A DNA stretch of 64,000 bases, taken from the NCBI RefSeq assembly GCF_006345805.1, contig NC_043015.1, positions 45,012,001 through 45,076,000 of the forward strand. Direction: 5' to 3'. Below are positions 5,578-52,151 of this stretch, in pieces. How positions within the stretch are numbered: the stretch's first letter is position 1; each line of letters starts with the position of its first letter. The translations under genes were made by a program, and so were the position numbers. Origin of the DNA: Octopus sinensis (Eukaryota). The notes beneath the pieces are model-generated. The model was not told where the DNA came from. It made no database searches and saw only the letters and a program-made list of their open reading frames with translations.

Positions 5578-5675
5578 TGAATGTGTGTTTGTGTATATAC
5601 AGATGTGTGAGCGTGTGTGTATATGCGTGTGTATGTGTGTGTCTGTTTATGTGTATGTTTGTATGTATGTATCTA

Positions 5676-16904: not shown

Positions 16905-17425
16905 AAGGGTATGGCCTGGTCAGCCTGTAATGACGTGCATAAGATCTGGTCATCAAATCTAAGTAGAGACTTCAAACTTGAAATCTTCAAAGCCACAGTC
17001 GAACCAATTCTACTATATGGCTCAGAAACCTGGACATTATCAAAGAAGCTTGAGAGGTGGTTGGATGGAACCTACACTCGCCTCCTTATGAGAGCTCAAA
17101 ATCTCTCGTGGAAGCGTCATCCAACCAAAATGCTAATAAATGGGAAACTACCACCTGTGTCATCTCTTGTGAAAGGTAGGAGAGTCCAGTTTGCTGGACA
17201 TTGTTGTAGAGCTGAAAAAGAGGTAATTTCTACTCTTCTCCTCTGGAAGCCATCAACTCGCAATACCAGAGGGCACACACTCTCCTATCCTGATGTAATC
17301 TCCAGGGATGCAGGCATCCAGCAACAGGACCTCCGTAATGCTTTGATGGACCGTGAAGTCTGGCGTAGCATGGTAAATTCCATTGTCTCGACTACGGTTG
17401 AACAATGATGAGTGATGATGATGAT
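16905..17425 (+). mobile_element. RTE-clade LINE 3' fragment
   Basis: 165-aa ORF 16911..17408 (LLYGSETWTL...RRVQFAGHC) followed by a (GAT)n tail. Confidence 0.9.
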
Positions 17426-23060: not shown

Positions 23061-23985
23061 CAAAATTATCACAGGCAATAAAGTATCCTAGTGATGTCGT
23101 AAACCTGCAGCATGACCTAAATGCAATATACAAGTGGGCAGAGCAAAACAGTATGCAATTTGATGCTGAAAAGTTTCAAGCACTGCACTATAAGATCACA
23201 AATGCTCCACAACTGGCATTTACAGGACCTGGGGGTACTGCAATCCCAGAGTCACAAACAGTGAGAGACCTTGGCATCAGTGTGTGTAATGATGCATCAT
23301 TTCACATGCGCATTACCAAGTTGGCAGCAAAGTGCAGACAACTTGTGGGATGGATACTGAGGACGTTCAGGATGAGAGATCAGGAAGTCATGTTGACTCT
23401 AAGGAAGATCTTTGTCCTCAGCCACCTAGACTACTGCTCTCAGCTGTGGTCACCACACAGTGTCAAGCTAGCAACAGAGCTTGAAACAATCCAGTATCAC
23501 TACACTAAAAAGATTGCTACAGTCCAACAGATGCCGACGACCGCTCAGTTCAAAGTCTCTCTTGACCAGAAATGGCCTGAACTCTTTGCATGAACACCCT
23601 CCCTGTACATAACTCCATGTCGTCCTACATGGCCTTGCTTTTTGCTTTTTGAGCCAAAAAATTAACTTAACTTAGATGAATTACAGGGAGAGGCTGAAAG
23701 AACTAACTCTACTCCCCAGAGCACAGATGTGAGGGATATGTAATAATTTACATGGGGAAAATACTGGAAGGGCTAGGACCCAATTTTGGCATCAAGCGTT
23801 ATATGAATACTTGTACTGGATGCCACTGCATCGTGCCAAAGGTACCGTCCAATGCATCTGATATAAGAACCAGGAACTGCAATAGCCTAGAGTTCAGAGG
23901 ATCAAAGCTCTTCGATGCTCTGCCAGAACAATTGAGAAACTTATATGATATAAATGTGAAAGTTTTCAAAAAGAAACTGGACACT
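23061..23985 (+). mobile_element. CR1/L2-clade LINE fragment
   Basis: MQFDAEKFQALH...VRDLGI...SHLDYCSQLWSP...LETIQ; frameshifted. Confidence 0.8.
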
Positions 23986-24894: not shown

Positions 24895-25297
24895 TCTTTT
24901 ATTTGTTTCAGTCATTTGACTGTGGCCATGCTGGAGCACCTCCTTTAGTCAAACAACTCGACCCCAGGACTTATTCTTTGTAAGTCTAGTACTTATTCTA
25001 TCGGGCTCTTTTGCCGAACTGCTAAGTTACAAGGATATAGACATGCCACCATTGGTTGTCAAGCAATGTTGGTGGGACAAACACAGATACACACACACAT
25101 ATATAATTTCAAATTAATAATAAAAGGGTAAAATTAATTGAAACAATTAGCTGACCCCTAATTATAATTATTTATATATATGACAGGCTTCTTTCAGTTT
25201 CTGTCTGCGAAATCCACTCACAAGGCTTTGGTCGGCCTAAGGCTAAAGTAGAAGACACTCACCCAAGGTGCCACACAGTGGGACTGAACCTAGAACC
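24895..25297 (-). mobile_element. SINE family A, tail-to-tail with the previous copy
   Basis: Reverse-complement match; ~70-bp AT-rich insert in its microsatellite. Confidence 0.8.
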
Positions 25298-25530
25298 ATG
25301 TGTGTGTGTGATAACTGAAAGGAGCCCATTGATACGTATGTGTGTATGTGAGGTGCTGTGATGGGTTTCTTTCAATTACCATCTTCCAAATCCATTCACA
25401 AGATTTTGGTTGGCCCAGCACTAGAGTAACATATGCCATTTGATAAGCAGAAACCATGTAGCTTGGAAGCAAACTTATTAACCTCACAGCAGGCCAGTGC
25501 CTATATATCATACAGACATATATATTGGTA

Positions 25531-25570
<40 letters not shown>

Positions 25571-25706
25571 CATATATAATACACACACGCATATATACAT
25601 ACATATGTATATATATATGCACATACACATATATACATACATATATACACACACATATATGTTCACACATATGTATATATATATATACACACATACACAC
25701 ACACAT

Positions 25707-25886
25707 ACATCATCATCATCATCATTTGGCATCCGCTTTCCATGCTAGCATGGGTTGGACGGTTCAACTGGGGTCTGTGAAGCTGGAAGGCTTCGTCAGG
25801 CCCAGTCAGATCTGGCAGTGTTTCTACGGCTGGATGCCCTTCCTAACGCCAACCACTCCGTGAGTGTAGTGGGTGCTTTTTACGTG
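25707..25886 (-). mobile_element. RTE-LINE 3' end (family B) within a microsatellite
   Basis: (CAT)n-TTTGGCATCCGCTTTCCATGCTAGC. Confidence 0.8.
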
Positions 25887-26175
25887 CTTTTTACATACAT
25901 ACATACATACATATATATATATACCCATACATATACATACATACATACACATACATACATACATACATATATATATATACACATACATACATATATACAC
26001 ACATACATACATACATATACACATACATACACACATACATACATACATATACATACATACATACACACATACATACATACATATATATATATACACATAC
26101 ATATACATACATACATATACATACACACATACATACATACACACATACATATATACATACACAAACATACAGACA
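25887..26175. repeat. (TACA)n/(TA)n compound microsatellite
   Basis: Direct reading. Confidence 0.95.
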
Positions 26176-26499
26176 GACAGAGAAATAGCAGTGTAAAGTA
26201 TCCTGTCAGTTATCTTTCAATTATCATTTCTTCTTTTTTTTTTTTCTTCTTTACCATTCGATTTACCATTATTGGTAGTTTACACAAAATCCGATCGATT
26301 TCCTATTGATTCCTCTTGGAATTGTCTCAGTACTTTCTAAATTTATGCCAGGCAGAATGTTGTGCAGTAGAGAAAAAATATATATATATATATATTTAAT
26401 TGTTTCTATATATTCATCTCCTGCACGACAAGCCCCCCCCCCCGCCTCCCCCACTACTGTCTCACGTCTCTGATCATTCTTTTGAATTCGGAACTCGTG

Positions 26500-26522
26500 T
26501 ATATGTGTGTATAAAATATGTA

Positions 26523-26563
<41 letters not shown>

Positions 26564-26738
26564 ATATATATAATATGTATGTATGTATGTATATATATAT
26601 ATATATTATGTATGTATGTATGTATGTATATATATATATATATAATATATATGTATGTATGTATATATGTATGTATATATGTATGCGTATGTATGTATAT
26701 ATATATATATATATATATAATGTATGTATGTATGTATG

Positions 26739-26784
<46 letters not shown>

Positions 26785-26923
26785 GTATATATGTATGTAT
26801 ATATATATATATATATATATATAATGTATGTATGTATATATATGTATGTATGTATGTATATATATGTATGTATGTATGTATGTATATATGTATATTATGT
26901 ATGTATGTATATAAATATATATG

Positions 26924-26967
<44 letters not shown>

Positions 26968-27413
26968 GTATGTATGTATATATGTATGTATATATATATG
27001 TATGTATGTATATATGTATGTATATATAATATATGTATGTATGTAATATGTATGTATATATATATATACGTATGTATGCATATATGTATGTATGTATATA
27101 TGTATATATATATATATACGTATGTATGCATATATATATGTATGTATATATATATGTATGTATGTATATATATATGTATGTATGTATGTATATATATATA
27201 TATGTATGTATATATATATGTGTGTGTGTATATATATATATATTATATATATATATATATGTATGTATATATATGTGTGTATATATATATATATGTATAT
27301 ATTTCTTTACTACCCACAAAGGGCTAAACAGAGGGGACAAACAAGGACAATATATATATGTATGTATATATGTATATATATATGTATATATATATATATG
27401 TATATATACATGT

Positions 27414-27444
<31 letters not shown>

Positions 27445-27470
27445 CTCACATATGCACACATATATACATC
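26500..27470. repeat. ~1-kb compound (TG)n/(TATG)n/(TA)n microsatellite
   Basis: Direct reading; contains a ~50-bp SINE C fragment at 27300-27350. Confidence 0.95.
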
Positions 27471-28848
27471 AACACATTTGTGTTTTGTATGTACATATGA
27501 AATACTTTATTCATATAATTTATCTGATGGTGTGTGTGTGTCTGTGTGTGTACGTGTGTCAATCGATAACGAAGTGAGGTTGTATCAGTGCAGTACAGTA
27601 CACAGACCGCTTTCTTCCGTCCAAACATAATACTATCTCTCGCTGGACAGATTACTTGACTTGACAGAAAGATTCGAAGGAATGGATAGAGAGAGAGAGA
27701 GAGAGAGAAAAAAAAAAAAGAAGAAAAAGACACAGCTGTAACGAGAGAGTGTGTGAGAGAGTTGGCATCAGGTGCGACAACACAGAAGATATATAGACAG
27801 TGGTCTTTTGAATAATTAATCATGCTTCTAATAAAGACAACCTCTTAAACTCTTGTCTCTGCTTCTGCACCATCTTCCATTAGAAATTATTCCGTCTTTT
27901 ACTGGATAATTATAAACTTGAAGCCATAGATATTTTGCTGTGTATTTTGTGTTTTTGAGTTGGGGTTTTTATTCCGATATTTTTTTGCGGGGTTTGTTGC
28001 TTTCTTTTGAAAACTTCAGTAAAGAAGTTTCTTAATATTTTTTAGCAGGAACTTTTTTTTTTTTTTCAAAAGTGTCGATTACACCCCTCCCCCCACCTCC
28101 TTTTAGACAATAGAAATTGAAATAAATATACCAAGTTTAAAAGCCGTATTTATTTTATAGAGATAAAAAAAAATATTTTATCTTTTTTTTTTTTTTCTTC
28201 GTGTCGGATTTATTATTATTTCTTGTCGTATCTCGTATTTTGTGGACAATTAAGTTTTGAAGATCAGGTTTTATCATTGTTTTTTATATTTTATGGAAAA
28301 TTGATTTAATTTCTTTTTTTTTTTCGAATGAAAATGGGGAGAATCAATAAAAAATAGTAATAAAATCACGATAAAACGATTATTAAAAAAAAAAAGAAGC
28401 AATTTTTCCCGCCTCTGTACTTGTTAACCTTTTCTTCTGAATCTGAATCGAATTCTGGTGCGTTAAGTCGCTAGATGTAACTACAGTAGGTCGCGATCCT
28501 ATTCGAGGTCTTTAAGAATTTATCTGGGGTTCGTCAAACCGCCCATATTTTAATAACGGTGGCAGCAGAACCTTCGTCTTAGACATAGTCGTTATTACGA
28601 TCAATATTTTGTAATTTTCGTTCAATAATTTGTCTCAAAGAAGGACTTGTATATATGCAAGTAATGTCATATTAACTTCTGAAGAACTGCAAAAGGTTCA
28701 CCAGAAATACTTAAGCGGGAACATTTTTGATTGAAGATAAATTTTTTTTTGTTAGGATGATGAATATTTCAATCACATTGATAATCAATATTATTAGTAG
28801 CTGGCTTTTGAATGTCTTGACTAAATTCTTACTATAAAATGAAGTTTA

Positions 28849-30942: not shown

Positions 30943-32476
30943 ATGGATGACAATACAAAAGTAATGTTGAAGCTGGCTACTTTCTTAGCTCAGCAGAACA
31001 ACTCTCGTGTCAACAATACAGGAAACCAAAACCCTCTTACAGAACTGGCTACCCAACTATTGATGAATAGCACTAGTGAAACCCTTGCCATACCAACGTC
31101 TCTGCAATCACACCCAGCAAAACAACTGCCATCTCATCAACCAGACAACAGCACCTCTAGCATGTTTCAAACACAAGCTTCACCAGTGCCTATCTCTCAG
31201 AACACTTCATCAAATCACATGAATAATACTTACAGTGTAAATGCTTCATCACTTCAAGGGAACATCGCAAATACAAAGAGTTCAGTTCCTAGGGCTAATG
31301 AGATGATGTCGCTGAACAATACTTCAAACAAAGACATGATTCCAGTAGCATCCCCAATCAACAGAGATTCTTTTAACGTAATGTCCCCTGTTATGGATCA
31401 AGAAAACTTCTCTCCTATCAACAGAGACAATTTCCCCATCAGCAGGGATACATTTAACGTGACAACTGCCAACTCTTATCCTATCAACTCACCTATGAAT
31501 CACGACACATTCACCACAGCTTCTTCTGTCAACCGAGATTCCTTTACAATGTCATCCGCAGTCAACAGGGAGTCCTATCCTGCAACATCATCTGGAAATT
31601 CACTCTCATCATCCCCAGCGACTAACCGGGAAATGTTAACTGTAATGCCGCCAGTAAATAGAGACACGTTTTCTGCTGCTTCTCCTGTCAACCGAGAAAC
31701 GTATCCCAATAATCCTGCTATGAATAGGGATACATTTAACGTCAACCGAGACAACATGAGTGGGAATTGTCCTGAGACAAGAGATTCATTTTCTTCAGAT
31801 TGCTCTGCTACTAGGGTCTCCTTTAACATAACATCACCAAGAAATCGAGAAAATTACACAAGTACTCCAGTTATTGGTCGAGACTCGTATTCGGTAACCT
31901 CCCCAGTTAATAGCGACTCTTACGGATCTGGGATGCCAACGAGCCATGAGTCTTACCAAGTCAGTTCTCCTTCTAACCGAATTTCTGAAGATTCTGCTAT
32001 GAACTCTTTGAATATGATGCGAGGGGATATCTCCAGAAATACAGCTTTAACAAGAGTTCCTGATGAGATGAATATGAACCAAGTGGAGGACATGGTTGTC
32101 ACTAGTGGCGGTGGTGGTGGAAGTAGTAACGGTAGTAGTATTAACAGCGGTTTGGGCTCAATCAACAGTTCAATGTCATGCAACCTGTCTTCCATGAACT
32201 CTTCTTCCAATGAAGTGCATATAAACTCTTCAAATAATTGTGCCTATTACAAGCGACCGATACAAGGAGAAAAGGGACGATCGTATCCCCAGCCAGTCAT
32301 ACTTCGATCACGACCTCGTCCTGTTAAAGAGAGGTCTAAAAGAGGTCCCAAAGAGAAGGATTATTTCAGAACTGCTTTCTTTTGTCTACCAAATGTGACA
32401 GCCCGACTCCCACGCTTTACGTCCTCTGATCCTCGTGAGCAAGACCTTGTCCTCGATTATCAAAAACAAGGTTATG
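30943..32476 (+). CDS. HECT-like pseudo-ligase gene, coding exon 1 (aa 1-511; S/N/T-rich region with 11-aa repeats, basic patch, start of central domain)
   Basis: Acceptor TTTCCAG at 30897; in-frame TGA at 30913 upstream of ATG 30943; 1.5-kb open frame; donor TAT G|GTAAGA (phase 1). Confidence 0.85.
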
Positions 32477-32568
32477 GTAAGAAATGTTTCTTTTATGTTC
32501 TTTTAATTAATGCCCCCTCCCCTCTCAAAAAATTTCTTGTCTTGCAAGTTACTTGGTTACCCTTCCAG

Positions 32569-32975
32569 TGCTGGTGCCACATAAAAATCATCCAGTCCAG
32601 AGTGTGAAGTGGTTGGCATTTGGAAGGGCATCTGGATGTAAAAAGACCATGCCAAAACTGACCTCACCTATGCTGGTGCCACATAAAAAGCATCCAGTCC
32701 AGAGTGTGAAGTGGTTGGCATTTGGAAGGGCATCTGGATGTAAAAATACCATACTAAAACTGACCTCACCTATGCTGGTGCCACATAAAAAGCACTCAGT
32801 CCACTCTATGGGGTGGTTGGTGTTAGGAAGAGCATCCAGCAGTAAAAGCCATGCCAAAACAGACACGGTAGCTAGGGTAGTTTTTCTAGCTTGGTGTAGT
32901 CTCCCACCTGGCCGGCTCCTGTCAAACCGTCCAACCCATGCCAGCATGGAAGGCAGACGTTAAACAATGATGATG
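32569..32975 (+). repeat. Intronic 102-bp tandem repeat derived from a family B element
   Basis: TGCTGGTGCCACATAAAAA starts at 32569, 32671 and 32773; ends in a family B (GAT)n tail. Confidence 0.85.
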
Positions 32976-33243: not shown

Positions 33244-33476
33244 GTTTCCCAGCAAAAGACTACTTTGAAGGCAAACCTCAGAAGACTTATATTCGTCTCA
33301 GTCATGATGAAGAAAGTTTCCGTTGCTTTCTGTTAAGTATTTATCCGAAACTTGAGGGAAAGTATTATGAACTTTATAGAATTGATCGGCAGAGAAATTT
33401 GGTTCGCATTGAAGCTAAGACCCCCCGCGGTATCAAGAATGCTAAATACCAAGGAACGATCATCATTTTGCCCTAC
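33244..33476 (+). CDS. HECT-like gene, coding exon 2
   Basis: TTTTACAG|GT TTC CCA...; reads GFPAKDYFEGKPQKTYIRLSHDEESFRCFLLSIYPKLEGKYYELYRIDRQRNLVRIEAKTPRGIKNAKYQGTIIILPY; donor GTAAGT; phase 1 to 0. Confidence 0.85.
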
Positions 33477-35210: not shown

Positions 35211-35426
35211 CCTGAAGCTTCAAATCCACCATCAGCTGTTGTGCACAACCCAAGTAGTATTGGAGACTTTCCTGTCCAGCTATGCAATGATTCCATTGAA
35301 AATATTAATGAAAACAATGAATGTGAAGAAGAAAACATGATACCATCACCAAGTGTCTGTGGTTCCACGCCCCAGCAATCTCCTTTCATGCCACCAAACC
35401 ATGAAGTAGCTACATATGATCATAAG
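35211..35426 (+). CDS. HECT-like gene, coding exon 3 (acidic/Pro-rich linker)
   Basis: Long T tract-TTTAG|CCT GAA GCT...CAT AAG|GTAACT; 216 nt, phase 0 to 0; PEASNPP...VATYDHK. Confidence 0.75.
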
Positions 35427-37258: not shown

Positions 37259-37325
37259 GAATCCTACGAGTTATCACCTCCATCTCCAGAACGTGATATC
37301 AAACCATTTCAAAGATTTGATTCTG
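37259..37325 (+). CDS. HECT-like gene, coding exon 4
   Basis: TTTTCTACTTCAAAG|GAA TCC...TCT G|GTACGT; ESYELSPPSPERDIKPFQRFDS; phase 0 to 1, which is required to join exon 3 to exon 5 in frame. Confidence 0.7.
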
Positions 37326-38826: not shown

Positions 38827-39890
38827 AAAATTCTGAATTATTTCAAAGAATTTCCCTCATAAAGCAAACTCTTTCCGAAACGAGAAACTTGAAGATGGAT
38901 AAAAGGTCTATCGTTGGAAATCTGTTGGAGTTGTATCGTGCTGAGCATACCATCTGTAACTATGACATCCGGGTCACATTTAACAATGACCCCAATCTCA
39001 CTTTATCGAACGATCCATCATTTCAAACACGTCACATGTTTTGTATATTCTGGAAGAAAATTTTCAACAATAATTTCGTCGGAAATGAAGAATACTATCC
39101 AGTCATAAGTCCCGAGGCTGAAGACGATATGTTTGAAATTCTCGGCCGCATTCTCGCTCATGGATTAATATTATGTAACTATTGGCCTATCCAGTTTGCT
39201 GTGGCATCAGCCACCTACATGCTCTGTCAAGGCTGCTCTGATGAGCTCATTTTGAAATCATTCACCAATTGCCTCAGTGGATTTGAGCAGAGGATTGTCA
39301 TGTCAGCCCTAAAGGAATCTCGTTCCCAAATTGGAGAACCAACTTTCTCTTCCACTCTAGAAACCAATTTATCAGCATTTCTATGGACTAACGGTTGTCA
39401 ATTAGACCGACCTGGTCAGCTTCCTGGTATTTTGTTAAGCATAGCCAGAAGTTACCTTATATACCAACCATACTGGGCACTTGTGAAGCTGAAAAAAGGA
39501 ATGGAACACTGCAGCAATAAAGTATTCAAAGATTGTTCTGAAAGCGATGTTGAAAATTTATACAAAACATTAACACCTGAAGCATCTCAAATTTGCAAAT
39601 TAATCAAGTATGAGTTTAGTCAAGAAGAATCTCACCAGGAAATTGAGAAAACATTACAGACTTACTTAGAAAAATTACTTTGGGAAATGTCATTAGTTGA
39701 ACTTGCAAACTTGTTACAATTGTGGACTGGTGTGAACTGCTTGTCACAACAAACTTTGTTTGTGAAATTTGTGAACACTTCAGATCAGTTGCTGTTTCAG
39801 AATCATAAATCTCTGCTCCGAATCCCTCGCAAAATACAGACATTTAAAGAATTTACAGAATCCATTCAATTACTTCTGGATGGAACATGA
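38827..39890 (+). CDS. HECT-like gene, coding exon 5: HECT-like domain without the catalytic Cys
   Basis: TTTTGCACAG|AA AAT...; HECT-like landmarks IRVTF, FWKKIF..FVG.EEYYP, ILGRILAHG, IA...LIYQP, LYKTLTP, LLQLWTG, LLRIP...F; stop TGA 39888-39890. Spliced CDS 3114 nt = 1037 aa. Confidence 0.85.
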
Positions 39891-46004: not shown

Positions 46005-46535
46005 GCTCCAAAATAAATCGAGATGGTGACTGCACTCCAGAAATAAGACGGCGGATAGTACTAGGCAGAGAGGCAATGGTCAGTATGAGCAGGGTCTGGA
46101 AGAGTAGAGACATCAGACTCGCTACCAAATGCAGATTGGTGAATGCAATTGTCTTCCCAATAGCAACATATGGATGCGAGACCTGGACAAAAAAGAGAAG
46201 TAATGCATTTGAGCTTTGGTGTTGGAGAAGACTTTTACGGATTCCATGGACAGCGAGGCTCACCAATGGAGAAAATGCCGCTAGAAGCTAGGATCAACAA
46301 GCATAGATTGGCATATTTCGGTCATATTATGCAGAGAAAATCCCTGGAGAAGGACATCATGCTCGGAATGGTTAGTGGCAAGAGAGGAAGAGGCCAACCA
46401 AGAACCCGCTGGCTTGACACCATCAAGAGTGATACCGGAATGGACATAGCCAATCTGAAAGAAGTGGCCCAGGATAGAACTGACTGGAGGACACTGATCC
46501 AACGAGTGATCGAGAGTTGACCTCGACTGAGCGAA
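46005..46535 (+). mobile_element. RTE (BovB-like) LINE 3' fragment
   Basis: VWKSRDIRLATKCRLVNAIVFPIATYGCETWT...YFGHIMQR.SLEKDIMLG...GRGQPRTRWLD. Confidence 0.85.
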
Positions 46536-51263: not shown

Positions 51264-52151
51264 TTAACGGCGTTTAGTTCCACCAAATCCAGAGGCTGTT
51301 CGAGTTTCGGAGCTGCTGAAGCTACTTGAGGGGCCAGAATGATAACCTGTTGGTGACCCAAACCAGTCTCTTTGATACCCATCATTGTAATAAGAGTTCG
51401 AGCGGTAACCACCTCTGTTTCCAAAAAGGTAGCCGAGAAATGCACCAGAAGCTAGACCACTGAAAAATCCAGGCTGTTGTCCGGTATTACTGTGAGATGT
51501 GGAGCTGTACGGAGGTGGAGCATCCTGGCCTGAGCAGTAATCGGATCTGAAACCGTATGGCGGTGGAGGGGCACTTGGAGTTGACCCGCTTTGTGCGCCT
51601 CCGGGAAACGATGATGGATTGGTAGGTGTTGCAAAACAAGTACGATACACGAAGAAGATAATCATAATAACAAACAGGAAAGTGAAAATTGAGCCGAACC
51701 CAAAACCCGATTCGTGTTTCGACGAGTAATGGTTGAAGTAACTGCCTGAGCCTTTCTGGTTTACGTAGTCAATGTCGTATTCCAGACCGCAAGAGCCAGC
51801 CAGGATGTAAGGGTCGTCAGCATACTCGTAACCTTCGCACGAGACAACGATCTGTCCGAAGCGATACCTTTTGTCCATGTCCGTTTTACATTCCCACTGG
51901 ATATCGTAGCCGTCCCAACCTCTGTTGTAACACTGGACGGTCTGTGGAATGACGGACCGACATCCTGCTGATCCGCCAGTGCATTTCAACTGAGCGACTG
52001 GGGAAGACCTCCTCGCGGTCGTCATCTGTCCACGATTTAGAGTGATCACGTTGATGTCCTGCAACAGGACTTTCCTTCCTTCGATTTCTTGGCCATAAAT
52101 CAAAACCAGTAAAATAAGTGTAAGTGCGGGAAGTCTCTTGATTTCTGTCAT
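51264..52151 (-). CDS. SARAF: Store-operated calcium entry-associated regulatory factor (SARAF/TMEM66), single coding exon, 295 aa
   Basis: Signal peptide; luminal domain with LTL..G.MTT.RRSSPV.QLKC, VQCYNRGWDGYDIQWECK, SCEGYEY..DPYIL.GSCGLEY and 6 Cys (57, 64, 74, 88, 105, 121); one TM helix (~153-169); PPPY motifs; C-terminal SGFGGTKRR. Confidence 0.95.
   Translation of the reverse strand: MTEIKRLPALTLILLVLIYGQEIEGRKVLLQDINVITLNRGQMTTARRSSPVAQLKCTGGSAGCRSVIPQTVQCYNRGWDGYDIQWECKTDMDKRYRFGQIVVSCEGYEYADDPYILAGSCGLEYDIDYVNQKGSGSYFNHYSSKHESGFGFGSIFTFLFVIMIIFFVYRTCFATPTNPSSFPGGAQSGSTPSAPPPPYGFRSDYCSGQDAPPPYSSTSHSNTGQQPGFFSGLASGAFLGYLFGNRGGYRSNSYYNDGYQRDWFGSPTGYHSGPSSSFSSSETRTASGFGGTKRR

What the first reader, a model, noticed from the sequence alone, without database searches (positions are those of the whole stretch)
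31327..31986. About 20 imperfect 11-residue repeats, consensus xSPxNR(D/E)(S/T)(F/Y)x
Seen: N-R-D/E-type anchors at aa 129, 140, 152, 160, 167, 186, 197, 208, 228, 239, 250, 261, 268, 279, 290, 301, 312, 323, 334 and 345, mostly 11 aa apart (e.g. ASPINRDSFNV, MPPVNRDTFSA, ASPVNRETYPN, TSPRNRENYTS). The DNA units are strongly diverged while the peptide pattern persists, which suggests selection on the protein. Inference: regularly spaced Arg and aromatic stickers with S/T-P sites could make a phosphorylation-switched condensate or multivalent docking array.
Basis: partly seen in the sequence, partly recalled or inferred. Interest (0 to 1): 0.7.

Follow-up and report, generated by a model that had tools for sequence, protein, structure and literature searches.

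The report
Octopus HECT-fold protein's 11-residue repeat arm
The repeats are real: about 20 copies of an 11-amino-acid unit built around N-R-D/E-S/T-F/Y form a disordered, lysine-free arm, seen only in octopus-like cephalopods, of an uncharacterised ubiquitin-system-like protein, and they most likely act as a multi-copy docking or self-association array, which remains untested.

Summary
Observation confirmed. Lag-11 autocorrelation has z = 9.9 (0 of 2000 shuffles), and TRF finds no DNA repeat.

The stretch lies in the first coding exon of a five-exon gene. Its 1037-aa spliced product is identical to Octopus sinensis LOC115221967 / O. vulgaris CAI9736961, which is annotated "uncharacterized".

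Architecture from AlphaFold2 and Foldseek:
- two N-terminal helices
- about 400 disordered residues holding the repeats
- a ubiquitin-like beta-grasp domain (weak match)
- a linker
- a C-terminal HECT fold with no Cys in the expected catalytic loop

R[DE]x[FY] motif counts are 11 in Octopus, 8-9 in Argonauta and 13-14 in two distant cephalopod-type orthologues, against about 0.1 expected. One lineage has only 4. Bivalve homologues and two unidentified transcripts have none.

Synonymous sites are saturated, yet the motif persists, so it is under selection. The array lies in a 306-residue lysine-free, arginine-containing stretch. This is a "lysine desert", as described for disordered regions of ubiquitin-system proteins.

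The best reading is a multivalent linear-motif array. The phospho-switch and condensate ideas are untested: no full CDK consensus site exists, and only 3 of 10 S/T-P sites are positionally conserved. Interest is modest.

The parts
30943..32476 (+). Coding part of exon 1 (aa 1-511 and the first base of codon 512). The start ATG is at 30943, the likely splice acceptor is ...ttccag| at about 30897, and the donor G|GTAAGA follows 32476.
   Evidence: ORF. Splice signals read. A brute-force splice reconstruction reproduces P0027 exactly, 1037 of 1037 residues. Conservation with the orthologous contig L001 stops about 15 bp past the donor.
30943..31080 (+). Conserved N-terminal two-helix motif (aa 1-46: MDDNTKVMLKLATFLAQQNN ... 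NPLTELATQLLMNS).
   Evidence: Nearly invariant in 7 cephalopod sequences and recognisable in Dreissena, unionids, P0054 and P0005. AlphaFold2 places helices at 3-20 and 31-46.
31312..31992 (+). The repeat array (aa 124-350): 20 units of nominally 11 residues with consensus [S/T]-P-(V/I/M)-N-R-(D/E)-(S/T)-(F/Y)-x-x-x. Eleven units are well formed and nine degenerate.
   Evidence: Predicted disordered.
32011..32067 (+). Their Arg residues are 11 apart.
   Evidence: Read from the sequence. N357, M358, M359, D362, N366 and R371 are invariant in 7 orthologues.
31333..32250 (+). Lysine-free stretch (aa 131-436, 306 residues) enclosing the array. The disordered region contains 21 Arg and 4 Lys.
   Evidence: The stretch is conserved in length (230-312 residues) in the other cephalopod orthologues. 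The rest of the protein has 6.1% Lys.
32338..32476 (+). Start of the conserved KRGPKEK / beta-grasp (ubiquitin-like) domain at the end of exon 1. It continues in exons 2 and 3.
   Evidence: KRGP found at aa 466. Invariant columns across molluscs. AlphaFold2 mean pLDDT is 87.9. All top Foldseek hits are beta-grasp domains, but E-values are weak at 5e-3 to 0.1.
33244..33476 (+). Exon 2 (middle of the ubiquitin-like domain).
   Evidence: tblastn and exact splice reconstruction.
35211..35426 (+). Exon 3 (end of the ubiquitin-like domain and start of the second disordered linker).
   Evidence: pLDDT is below 50 for P0003 residues 601-680.
37259..37325 (+). Exon 4 (linker).
38827..39890 (+). Exon 5 with the stop codon. 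It encodes the whole C-terminal HECT-fold domain (aa about 685-1037). The expected catalytic loop reads N-H-K-S and has no Cys.
   Evidence: AlphaFold2 pLDDT is about 90. Foldseek against PDB matches UBR5, NEDD4, HUWE1, Smurf and E6AP HECT domains, with E down to 6e-12 and TM (target) up to 0.59.

Best explanation
SHOWN:
- The repeats lie in the first coding exon of Octopus LOC115221967, a 1037-aa protein that nobody has characterised.
- The domain order is: two short N-terminal helices, about 400 disordered residues, a small ubiquitin-like beta-grasp domain, a second linker, and a C-terminal HECT-fold domain.
- The disordered arm holds about 20 units of 11 residues centred on N-R-(D/E)-(S/T)-(F/Y), usually preceded by (S/T)-P-hydrophobic.
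- The array is present in octopods (Octopus, Argonauta) and in a second, distant cephalopod-type lineage. It is absent from bivalve homologues and from two unidentified transcripts that are about 40% identical.
- Since the expansion, the units have diverged by point substitution rather than being homogenised. The core motif has been kept while synonymous sites saturated.
- The array sits inside a 306-residue stretch with no lysine and 7% arginine.

INFERRED:
- A 33-bp unit expanded in tandem once, before the two cephalopod lineages split.
- The arm works as a flexible, multivalent array of one short linear motif. Many copies of R-(D/E)-x-(F/Y) either dock several copies of one partner domain or self-associate through Arg-aromatic and Arg-acid contacts. 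This would concentrate the ubiquitin-like and HECT-fold modules or their clients.
- Basic residues are Arg and never Lys because a disordered arm tethered to ubiquitin-transfer machinery would otherwise be ubiquitylated. This is the 'lysine desert' logic.
- Ser/Thr between the acid and the aromatic residue (R-x-S/T-hydrophobic, 10 sites) and the S/T-P sites could tune binding by phosphorylation. That step is pure inference.
For: - Gene model and identity.
- Periodicity: z = 9.9 in Octopus, and z = 8.1, 5.8 and 8.2 in Argonauta, P0001 and P0002.
- Motif enrichment: 11, 9, 13 and 14 copies against about 0.1 expected, with a maximum of 2 in 5000 shuffles.
- No copies in 10 non-coleoid homologues or fragments.
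- Selection: pS 0.76 (saturated) against pN 0.31 in the repeats and 0.50 in the neighbouring linker.
- Core more conserved than spacers: Fisher p 6.5e-5 and 2.5e-4.
- No concerted evolution: unit nucleotide identity is 0.45, and TRF finds nothing.
- Expression: spliced RNA-assembly contigs carry the whole ORF, including the array, in related species.
- Disorder: pLDDT about 28 with no secondary structure over residues 44-461.
- HECT fold: Foldseek E 6e-12 with about 400 aligned columns.
- Beta-grasp fold: all top Foldseek hits are beta-grasp domains such as UBX, RAWUL, Atg8, PB1 and USP-UBL.
- Lysine-free stretch: 306 residues, conserved at 230-312 residues in orthologues, with R 21 against K 4.
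- Literature: lysine deserts are enriched in disordered regions of E3 ligases and UBL-domain shuttle proteins and are not Arg-depleted. Arg residues in the UBQLN1 desert are needed for speckle formation (PMC10169902). A conserved desert is functionally required in the HECT ligase EEL-1/HUWE1 (PMC13472506).
Against: - No partner is known. From memory, the motif matches no linear-motif class (NPF, DPF, FxDxF, LIR, RVxF, RxL, PIP, TQT), and no tool here could test that.
- One lineage (P0053) has lost most units (4 motifs, lag-11 z = 1.6), so the array is dispensable there.
- A spacer-only test of unit-by-unit collinearity between Octopus and the distant orthologues is not significant (rho 0.16 with 642 of 5000 permutations as high, and rho -0.29). 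Strict one-to-one orthology of units is therefore unproven. The core-versus-spacer contrast may also be inflated by alignment bias.
- The octopus HECT fold has no Cys in the expected catalytic loop. If the protein is not an active ligase, protection from its own activity would not explain the lysine desert.
- The ubiquitin-like assignment rests on weak Foldseek E-values.
Confidence: 0.5

Rival explanations
1. Phosphorylation-switched condensate scaffold. Evenly spaced Arg and Phe/Tyr 'stickers' in an S/T/N/P-rich spacer drive phase separation, and proline-directed kinases (CDK/MAPK) dissolve or tune it.
For: - The region is disordered.
- It holds 17 aromatic and 16 Arg residues in 227, spaced with period 11.
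- Ser, Asn and Thr together make up 41% of the region.
- Arg is used instead of Lys. Arg favours condensates over Lys, and Arg in the UBQLN1 desert is needed for speckles (PMC10169902).
- There are 10 S/T-P sites.
Against: - No [ST]-P-x-[KR] site exists.
- Only 3 of 10 S/T-P sites are positionally conserved in distant orthologues.
- Aromatic content is 7.5% and Gly 2%, lower than I recall for FUS/hnRNPA1-type domains.
- Each Arg is neutralised by an adjacent acid, and the net charge is -6.
- The tight conservation of a five-residue core (N-R-D/E-x-F/Y) looks more like a specific binding motif than a generic sticker.
- There is no experimental evidence of any kind.
Confidence: 0.2
2. Largely neutral relic. 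An old minisatellite expansion inside a disordered linker, whose only role is length and flexibility (an entropic spacer) between the N-terminal helices and the ubiquitin-like domain. The motif is decaying slowly.
For: - The array is absent from all non-coleoid homologues, whose linkers are short or Q-rich.
- P0053 has lost periodicity and most motifs.
- Nine of the 20 Octopus units are already degenerate.
- The spacer-only collinearity test is not significant.
Against: - Synonymous sites are saturated, yet four lineages each keep 9-14 copies of a four-residue pattern expected about 0.1 times.
- pN in the repeats (0.31) is lower than in the neighbouring non-repeat linker (0.50).
- Core positions are more conserved than the rest.
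- The lysine-free state is also maintained across lineages.
Confidence: 0.2
3. A folded repeat structure: either an 11-mer amphipathic helix of the apolipoprotein / alpha-synuclein / LEA-3 / perilipin type, or a beta-solenoid with one unit per turn.
For: An exact 11-residue period is the hallmark of 3-11 amphipathic helices (own knowledge). The periodicity is strong.
Against: - Pro occurs at position -2 in 11 of 20 units and makes up 8.8% of the region.
- AlphaFold2 gives no helix or strand and pLDDT about 28 over the whole array, although the flanking domains reach about 90.
- The 7-, 8-, 12-, 19- and 20-residue spacings would break any regular solenoid.
Confidence: 0.04
4. Not a real protein feature: a chance ORF or mis-annotated intron or transposon sequence.
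For: Nothing beyond the absence of Pfam hits.
Against: - The spliced product equals the annotated O. sinensis / O. vulgaris protein residue for residue.
- Orthologues exist in O. bimaculoides and Argonauta hians.
- Full-length spliced RNA contigs containing the array exist in related species.
- Conservation starts at the ATG and stops at the splice donor.
Confidence: 0.01

Closest known systems
Lysine deserts in disordered regions of ubiquitin-proteasome components (RAD23A, UBQLN1/2, BAG6, RNF115, RNF126; HUWE1/EEL-1)
   Same: A long (306-aa), evolutionarily maintained stretch with no lysine, predicted disordered and not depleted of Arg, in a protein carrying ubiquitin-system folds: a UBL-like domain followed by a HECT fold. 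The published deserts have the same properties, often lie next to a UBL domain, and in UBQLN1 contain Arg residues needed for speckles (PMC10169902; PMC13472506).
   Different: Periodic motifs are not mentioned in the parts of those papers I read. Here the desert is filled with a periodic 11-residue unit. The octopus HECT fold lacks a Cys in the expected catalytic loop, so it is unclear whose ligase activity would be avoided. The desert is clade-specific, because bivalve homologues have Lys in their linkers.
Multi-copy linear-motif arrays in disordered arms, such as Eps15 DPF repeats, epsin/Eps15-partner NPF repeats, GW182 GW repeats, ASCIZ TQT (LC8) sites and nucleoporin FG repeats (own knowledge)
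   Same: Many copies of a 3-5-residue core containing an aromatic residue. The cores are embedded in polar, Pro-containing, disordered spacers. Core residues are conserved while spacers and exact copy number drift between lineages.
   Different: The core N-R-(D/E)-(S/T)-(F/Y) matches none of those motifs, and no receptor domain is known. The spacing here is much more regular (13 of 19 intervals exactly 11), which shows a tandem-duplication origin.
Sticker-and-spacer prion-like low-complexity domains (FUS, hnRNPA1) and the RNA polymerase II CTD heptads (own knowledge)
   Same: Disordered, with evenly spaced aromatic residues, Arg as a possible second sticker, S/T-P sites inside a tandem unit, and a polar S/N/T-rich spacer.
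   Different: Aromatic density is lower (7.5%) and there is almost no Gly or Gln. An acidic residue is fixed next to every Arg. There is no RNA-binding domain in the protein. The units are far less uniform than CTD heptads, and the S/T-P sites are poorly conserved.
HECT-type E3 ubiquitin ligases (UBR5, NEDD4, HUWE1, E6AP). This is context for the host protein, not for the repeats.
   Same: The C-terminal 350 residues adopt the bilobed HECT fold (Foldseek E 6e-12 to 1e-8 for about 50 HECT structures). As in other HECT proteins, the variable N-terminal part would be the partner-selecting part (own knowledge).
   Different: No Pfam HECT hit for the octopus protein and no PDB sequence-profile hit. 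The expected catalytic loop reads N-H/Y-K-S in octopods and has Thr in bivalves. A Cys appears there only in P0053, P0054 and P0005.
Unrelated proteins with 11-residue R-D-x-F/Y repeats found by the profile search: the N-terminal region of salmonid DNA polymerase nu (ERDGFGASHTV), P0023 (AAINRENFDNQ), P0022/P0051 (SSPSRDSYSGS) and P0025 (SLSRDSLAGKE)
   Same: The same period and a similar R-(D/E)-x-aromatic/hydrophobic core in low-complexity tandem arrays.
   Different: There is no homology outside the repeat, and these units are nearly identical to each other (young arrays). They were retrieved by a period-11 profile, so the shared period is a selection effect and does not show a shared function.

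Membership tests
HECT E3 ubiquitin ligase (host protein) | Bilobed HECT fold (N-lobe plus C-lobe) at the C-terminus | tested here: met
   AlphaFold2 pLDDT is about 90 for residues 681-1033 of P0003. Foldseek against PDB gives 96 matches at E <= 0.001. The 50 listed are all HECT-ligase structures, with E down to 6e-12, about 400 aligned columns and TM (target) up to 0.59.
HECT E3 ubiquitin ligase (host protein) | Sequence-profile membership (Pfam PF00632 above its gathering score) | tested here: not met
   No HECT hit for the octopus protein or for 10 of 11 family members. Dreissena P0015 scores 18.5 bits against a cut-off of 23.9. A family profile finds no PDB chain at E <= 1.
HECT E3 ubiquitin ligase (host protein) | Catalytic Cys in the C-lobe loop about 30-35 residues from the C-terminus | tested here: not met
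   The loop between the last two strands of the model reads N-Y-K-S in O. bimaculoides and N-H-K-S in the window. It has Thr in bivalves and Cys only in P0053, P0054 and P0005. Caveat: I placed the loop from the sequence alignment and model secondary structure, because no residue-level superposition was available. An invariant Cys (C984 in P0003) lies 24 residues upstream.
HECT E3 ubiquitin ligase (host protein) | E2 binding and ubiquitin thioester formation | not testable with these tools
   Needs a biochemical assay.
Lysine desert of a ubiquitin-system protein (sensu PMC10169902) | Long uninterrupted stretch without Lys, in a disordered region | tested here: met
   306 residues (aa 131-436) without Lys, all within the pLDDT < 50 segment. 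With 6.1% Lys elsewhere in the protein, the chance probability is about 0.939^306, roughly 4e-9 (my own arithmetic).
Lysine desert of a ubiquitin-system protein (sensu PMC10169902) | Conserved in orthologues and not explained by general depletion of basic residues | tested here: met
   Lys-free stretches of 302, 312, 230, 256 and 260 residues in P0003, P0052, P0053, P0001 and P0002. Arg 16-24 against Lys 4-6 in their disordered regions.
Lysine desert of a ubiquitin-system protein (sensu PMC10169902) | Introduced lysines become ubiquitylated or destabilise the protein | not testable with these tools
   Experimental.
Sticker-and-spacer phase-separating low-complexity domain | Intrinsic disorder with uniformly patterned aromatic (and Arg) residues | tested here: met
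   pLDDT is about 28 with no secondary structure. F/Y and R recur with period 11.
Sticker-and-spacer phase-separating low-complexity domain | Actual phase separation, and its control by phosphorylation | not testable with these tools
   Indirect indicators are weak. There are no [ST]P.[KR] sites and 10 minimal S/T-P sites, of which 3 are positionally conserved.
11-mer amphipathic-helix repeats (apolipoprotein, alpha-synuclein, LEA-3, perilipin) | Helix-compatible units (no regular Pro) predicted or shown to be helical | tested here: not met
   Pro occurs in most units (11 of 20 at position -2). AlphaFold2 predicts no helix anywhere in residues 47-461.
Ubiquitin-like (beta-grasp) domain (middle domain of the host protein) | Beta-grasp fold | tested here: inconclusive
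   The model is confident (pLDDT 87.9, pTM 0.81). The best Foldseek hit has E = 5e-3 (p47 UBX, TM target 0.65). The remaining hits are almost all beta-grasp domains (RAWUL, GABARAP/GATE-16, PB1, USP UBL, ubiquitin) at E 0.007-0.17. One family member has a weak Pfam OTU1_UBXL hit at E 0.02.

The most novel reading that the evidence does not exclude
The array is a cephalopod invention that turns an ancient mollusc ubiquitin-like/HECT-fold protein into a multivalent scaffold. The 10-14 R-(D/E)-(S/T)-(F/Y) units bind a specific, still unknown receptor domain, or self-associate into condensates. The Ser/Thr wedged between the acid and the aromatic residue acts as a phospho-switch. Strict avoidance of lysine keeps the arm from being ubiquitylated by the machinery it recruits. 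This would define a new linear-motif class and a clade-specific regulatory module of the ubiquitin system.
Probability: 0.15. Interest if true: 0.6.

Novelty: new member of a known kind. Interest (0 to 1): 0.35.

Why it matters
If the motif has a dedicated receptor, it would be a new short-linear-motif class. It would also be a clean natural example of a disordered arm gaining multivalency by one tandem expansion and then being held by selection while its DNA repeat signature disappears.

The combination of a periodic motif array and a strict lysine desert next to ubiquitin-like and HECT folds gives a concrete, testable case for two ideas. One is that lysine deserts protect flexible arms of ubiquitin-system proteins. 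The other is that Arg is kept there for interaction reasons.

The host family has no Pfam or PDB sequence match and was found here only in mollusc or unidentified sequences. It is entirely uncharacterised and may be a pseudo-HECT. This work supplies a domain map and a gene model check for it.

Otherwise this is one lineage-specific repeat in one uncharacterised protein, with no known phenotype and no open question that it resolves.

Tried and rejected
- The word-indexed protein search with the conserved C-terminal 85 aa of exon 1 returned nothing, not even the known orthologues. I treat this as a tool limitation and the search was wasted.
- Pfam scans of the exon product, the full protein and 11 family members gave no significant family. 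The only results were sub-threshold HECT, SNU71_RBD and OTU1_UBXL hits.
- The PDB sequence-profile search with the family alignment gave no hit at E <= 1.
- tblastx and blastn of the 10 kb downstream of the orthologous exon in L001 against the window found no further conserved exon, because the introns are too long. The exons were found by mapping P0003 and P0027 instead.
- Literature searches for the motif string, the LOC identifiers and the run/assembly accessions returned nothing relevant. A general search on repeat/motif arrays gave only background.
- I could not name the source organisms of P0001 (ENA ERZ21867824), P0002 (ERR3431203), P0053 (SRR27666071) or P0054 (SRR21372852). Calling the first three "decapodiform" is an inference from about 55% identity to Octopus, against 84% for Argonauta.
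- The spacer-only test of unit-by-unit collinearity between Octopus and P0001/P0002 was not significant. Unit orthology rests on the global alignment and on landmarks: the two Cys-containing units and the 7-residue short unit.
- The bacterial promoter/terminator scan near the exon start is irrelevant for a eukaryotic gene.
- Pfam checks of three retroelement-looking ORFs elsewhere in the window were uninformative.
- From memory only, I compared the unit with known motif classes: NPF, DPF/FxDxF, LIR, PP1 RVxF, cyclin RxL, 14-3-3, TRAF6, SPOP and PxVxL. None fits consistently. One unit (TRVSF, aa 290-294) matches RVxF, but it reads TRDSF in the distant orthologues, so I take it as chance.
- N-glycosylation is rejected. 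There are 20 N-x-S/T sequons, but I saw no signal peptide when reading the N-terminus, and the sequons follow from the Asn/Ser/Thr-rich composition.
Full report
**1. The observation**

The window is eukaryotic DNA, with long introns, interspersed repeats and about 38% GC. The finding lies in a 554-codon open frame at 30943-32607 (+).

Thirteen of the 19 intervals are exactly 11 residues. Only 11 units are well formed ([NSTG]R[DE][STN][FY]). The other nine are degenerate.

The period is highly significant. The BLOSUM62 autocorrelation has z = 9.9 at lag 11 and z = 7.1 at lag 22. None of 2000 shuffles reached either value, and the largest z at any lag in any shuffle was 4.4. The core R[DE]x[FY] occurs 11 times, against 0.09 expected and a maximum of 2 in 5000 shuffles.

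At the DNA level the repeat is invisible. Tandem Repeats Finder reports nothing, unit nucleotide identity averages 0.45, and identical residues share a codon only 38% of the time.

**2. The gene**

An acceptor (ttccag|) lies about 45 bp upstream of the ATG, and a donor (G|GTAAGA) follows 32476.

A profile search of 1.84 billion representative proteins found a 1033-aa full-length relative, P0003. It is O. bimaculoides XP_014782703, "uncharacterized protein LOC106878106". Its cluster mate P0027 is O. sinensis XP_029647925 (LOC115221967) and O. vulgaris CAI9736961.

Mapping these proteins onto the window and enumerating GT/AG boundaries gives five coding exons: 30943-32476, 33244-33476, 35211-35426, 37259-37325 and 38827-39890. 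Their joined translation equals P0027 at all 1037 residues. The window is therefore Octopus vulgaris/sinensis, and the repeats are aa 124-350 of this protein.

Spliced RNA-assembly contigs carry the complete ORF, including the array, in a related species (P0053). A homologue without the array (P0054) is also carried on such a contig.

**3. The host protein**

Pfam finds nothing significant in it or in ten relatives. A family profile finds no PDB chain.

AlphaFold2 with an 11-sequence alignment gives the following:
- two N-terminal helices (3-20 and 31-46)
- a region from 44 to 461 with pLDDT about 28 and no secondary structure
- a confident domain at 462-600
- a second low-confidence linker at 601-680
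- a confident C-terminal domain at 681-1033 with pLDDT about 90

Foldseek against the PDB matches the C-terminal domain to about 50 HECT-ligase structures, including UBR5, NEDD4, HUWE1, Smurf1/2, AREL1, WWP1/2 and E6AP. E-values reach 6e-12, about 400 columns align, and TM normalised to the target reaches 0.59. This domain is encoded exactly by exon 5.

The loop where HECT ligases carry the catalytic cysteine lies between the last two strands of the model. It reads N-H/Y-K-S in octopods, has Thr in bivalves, and has Cys only in P0053, P0054 and P0005. The octopus protein is therefore a HECT-fold protein but probably not a canonical thioester-forming HECT ligase. No residue-level superposition was available to confirm this.

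The middle domain was modelled alone (pLDDT 87.9, pTM 0.81). It gives only weak Foldseek hits (E 5e-3 to 0.17). Nearly all of them are beta-grasp or ubiquitin-like domains: p47 UBX, RING1B RAWUL, GABARAP/GATE-16, PB1, USP UBLs and ubiquitin. I call it ubiquitin-like, tentatively.

**4. Distribution and evolution of the array**

Homologues sharing the KRGPKEK/beta-grasp domain and the HECT fold occur in bivalves: Saccostrea, Dreissena, Potamilus, Sinanodonta, Tegillarca, Mytilus and Pecten. They also occur in two unidentified transcripts, P0054 and P0005, which are about 40% identical. None of these has a single R[DE]x[FY] in its linker, which is short or Q-rich.

| Sequence | R[DE]x[FY] copies | Lag-11 z |
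|---|---|---|
| Octopus (three species) | 11 | 9.9 |
| Argonauta hians | 8-9 | 8.1 |
| P0001 (distant, about 55% identical) | 13 | 5.8 |
| P0002 (distant, about 55% identical) | 14 | 8.2 |
| P0053 | 4 | 1.6 |

A global alignment puts the arrays in register. Its landmarks include the two Cys-containing units and the 7-residue short unit. However, a spacer-only test of unit collinearity is not significant. I therefore regard one-to-one unit orthology as likely for parts of the array but not proven.

Between Octopus and P0001, synonymous differences are saturated (pS 0.76-0.91). pN is 0.31 in the repeats, 0.50 in the upstream linker and 0.057 in the conserved exon end. Core residues are more conserved than the rest (0.64-0.66 vs 0.37-0.38; Fisher p 6.5e-5 and 2.5e-4). 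Alignment bias is a caveat for that comparison.

The alignment-free fact is that four lineages each retain 9-14 copies of a pattern expected about 0.1 times, despite saturated silent sites. Purifying selection on the motif explains this best. A single old tandem expansion followed by point divergence, without concerted evolution, explains why the DNA repeat has vanished.

From my own knowledge, the octopod-decapodiform split is a few hundred million years old. That the distant sequences are decapodiform is an inference.

**5. Lysine desert**

The array lies in a stretch of 306 residues (aa 131-436) with no lysine. The disordered region holds 21 Arg, and the rest of the protein has 6.1% Lys. 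Lys-free stretches of 230-312 residues are kept in all cephalopod orthologues.

Such "lysine deserts" are reported to be enriched in disordered regions of E3 ligases and UBL-domain shuttle proteins. They are not depleted of Arg and protect against adventitious ubiquitylation. In UBQLN1 they contain Arg residues needed for speckle formation (PMC10169902). A conserved desert is functionally required in the HECT ligase EEL-1/HUWE1 (PMC13472506).

This fits a disordered arm attached to ubiquitin-like and HECT folds. It also offers a reason why the basic residue of the unit is always Arg.

**6. Mechanism**

Shown:
- disorder
- periodic Arg-acid-Ser/Thr-aromatic cores
- selection on the core
- lysine avoidance
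- a ubiquitin-system fold context

Inferred: the arm is a multivalent linear-motif array. It either docks several copies of one receptor domain or self-associates. This would raise the local concentration of the ubiquitin-like/HECT-fold module or its clients.

Each unit offers a Ser/Thr in an R-x-S/T-hydrophobic context (10 sites). About half offer an S/T-P (10 sites), but none fits [ST]-P-x-[KR]. Only 3 of 10 S/T-P sites are positionally conserved in the distant orthologues, against 5-7 of 10 R-x-S/T-hydrophobic sites.

The condensate idea is compatible with the composition but has no direct support. A folded 11-mer helix or solenoid is disfavoured by the regular Pro, the irregular spacings and the AlphaFold2 result. 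A purely neutral relic is disfavoured by the motif retention, but the decay in P0053 shows that the constraint can be lost.

**7. Comparison and novelty**

The feature belongs to known kinds: tandemly generated linear-motif arrays in disordered arms, and lysine deserts of ubiquitin-system proteins. The specific core motif, its regular 11-residue origin and its host family are undescribed. That family is known here only from mollusc sequences, has UBL-like plus HECT-fold domains, and has no Pfam model. No paper mentions the gene.

The profile search also retrieved unrelated proteins with 11-residue R-D-x-F/Y repeats, including salmonid DNA polymerase nu. These are young, near-identical arrays picked up by a period-11 profile, and I treat them as convergent low-complexity sequence.

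**Verdict**

This is a real and selected feature that is moderately interesting. The mechanism is still inferential. I took no step that needed referral.

Noticed in passing
window 31333-32250 (aa 131-436): A 306-residue stretch with no lysine but 7% arginine encloses the repeat array. Lys-free stretches of 230-312 residues are kept in the other cephalopod orthologues. This matches published 'lysine deserts' of ubiquitin-system proteins.
   Followed up: yes
window 38827-39890 (exon 5): The C-terminal domain is a HECT fold by Foldseek, but the expected catalytic loop reads N-H-K-S with no Cys. Relatives have Thr (bivalves) or Cys (P0053, P0054, P0005). A different Cys (C984 of P0003, in W-x-G-x-x-C-L) and Trp979 are invariant across all 11 family members. 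The protein may be a pseudo-HECT or have a relocated active site.
   Followed up: partly
window 32338-32476, 33244-33476 and 35211-35426: The conserved KRGPKEK... domain models confidently (pLDDT 88). It resembles beta-grasp/ubiquitin-like domains (UBX, RAWUL, Atg8, PB1, USP-UBL) only weakly, with E 5e-3 to 0.17. I know of no described ligase with a UBL-like domain directly upstream of a HECT fold.
   Followed up: partly
window 51264-52151 (-): An uninterrupted 295-codon ORF encodes a full-length SARAF homologue (store-operated calcium entry regulator; Pfam PF06682, E 8e-82). It appears to be a single coding exon, which may mean an intronless gene or a retrocopy.
   Followed up: no
window 32569-32864 (intron 1), plus about 12 other places (near 5600, 11000, 19400, 25800, 36600, 38200, 41800, 43600, 47400, 49600, 54800): A SINE-like interspersed element whose spurious ORFs read '...LDALPNANH...'. 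In intron 1 it forms a 102-bp x 2.9 tandem array.
   Followed up: partly
window about 25200-27600: An AT-rich microsatellite/low-complexity block (GC 0.257) gives long spurious [10 protein letters not shown] ORFs on both strands.
   Followed up: no
window 16911-17408, 23153-23593 and 46170-46520 (+): ORFs that look like C-terminal fragments of retroelement (LINE-type) proteins, judged by eye. Pfam gave only sub-threshold, uninformative hits.
   Followed up: partly
P0006 (Oncorhynchus kisutch XP_031687209, DNA polymerase nu cluster), residues about 320-545: About 20 near-identical 11-residue repeats (ERDGFGASHTV) sit in the N-terminal region of salmonid DNA polymerase nu. Copy number seems variable, since cluster members range from 547 to 1627 aa. 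Similar 11-mers occur in P0023, P0022/P0051 and P0025. I regard them as convergent and unrelated to the octopus gene.
   Followed up: no
P0018 (Tegillarca granosa KAJ8314875), middle domain: The gene model contains a three-fold internal duplication of the 'VKTPRAIKDLKYQGTLVVIPY' segment of the ubiquitin-like domain. It is probably an assembly or annotation artefact, or a recent exon duplication.
   Followed up: no
window aa 290-294 (nt 31810-31824): One unit reads T-R-V-S-F, which fits the PP1-docking RVxF pattern (own knowledge). It is kept in the four octopod sequences but reads TRDSF in the distant orthologues, so it is probably a chance variant.
   Followed up: no
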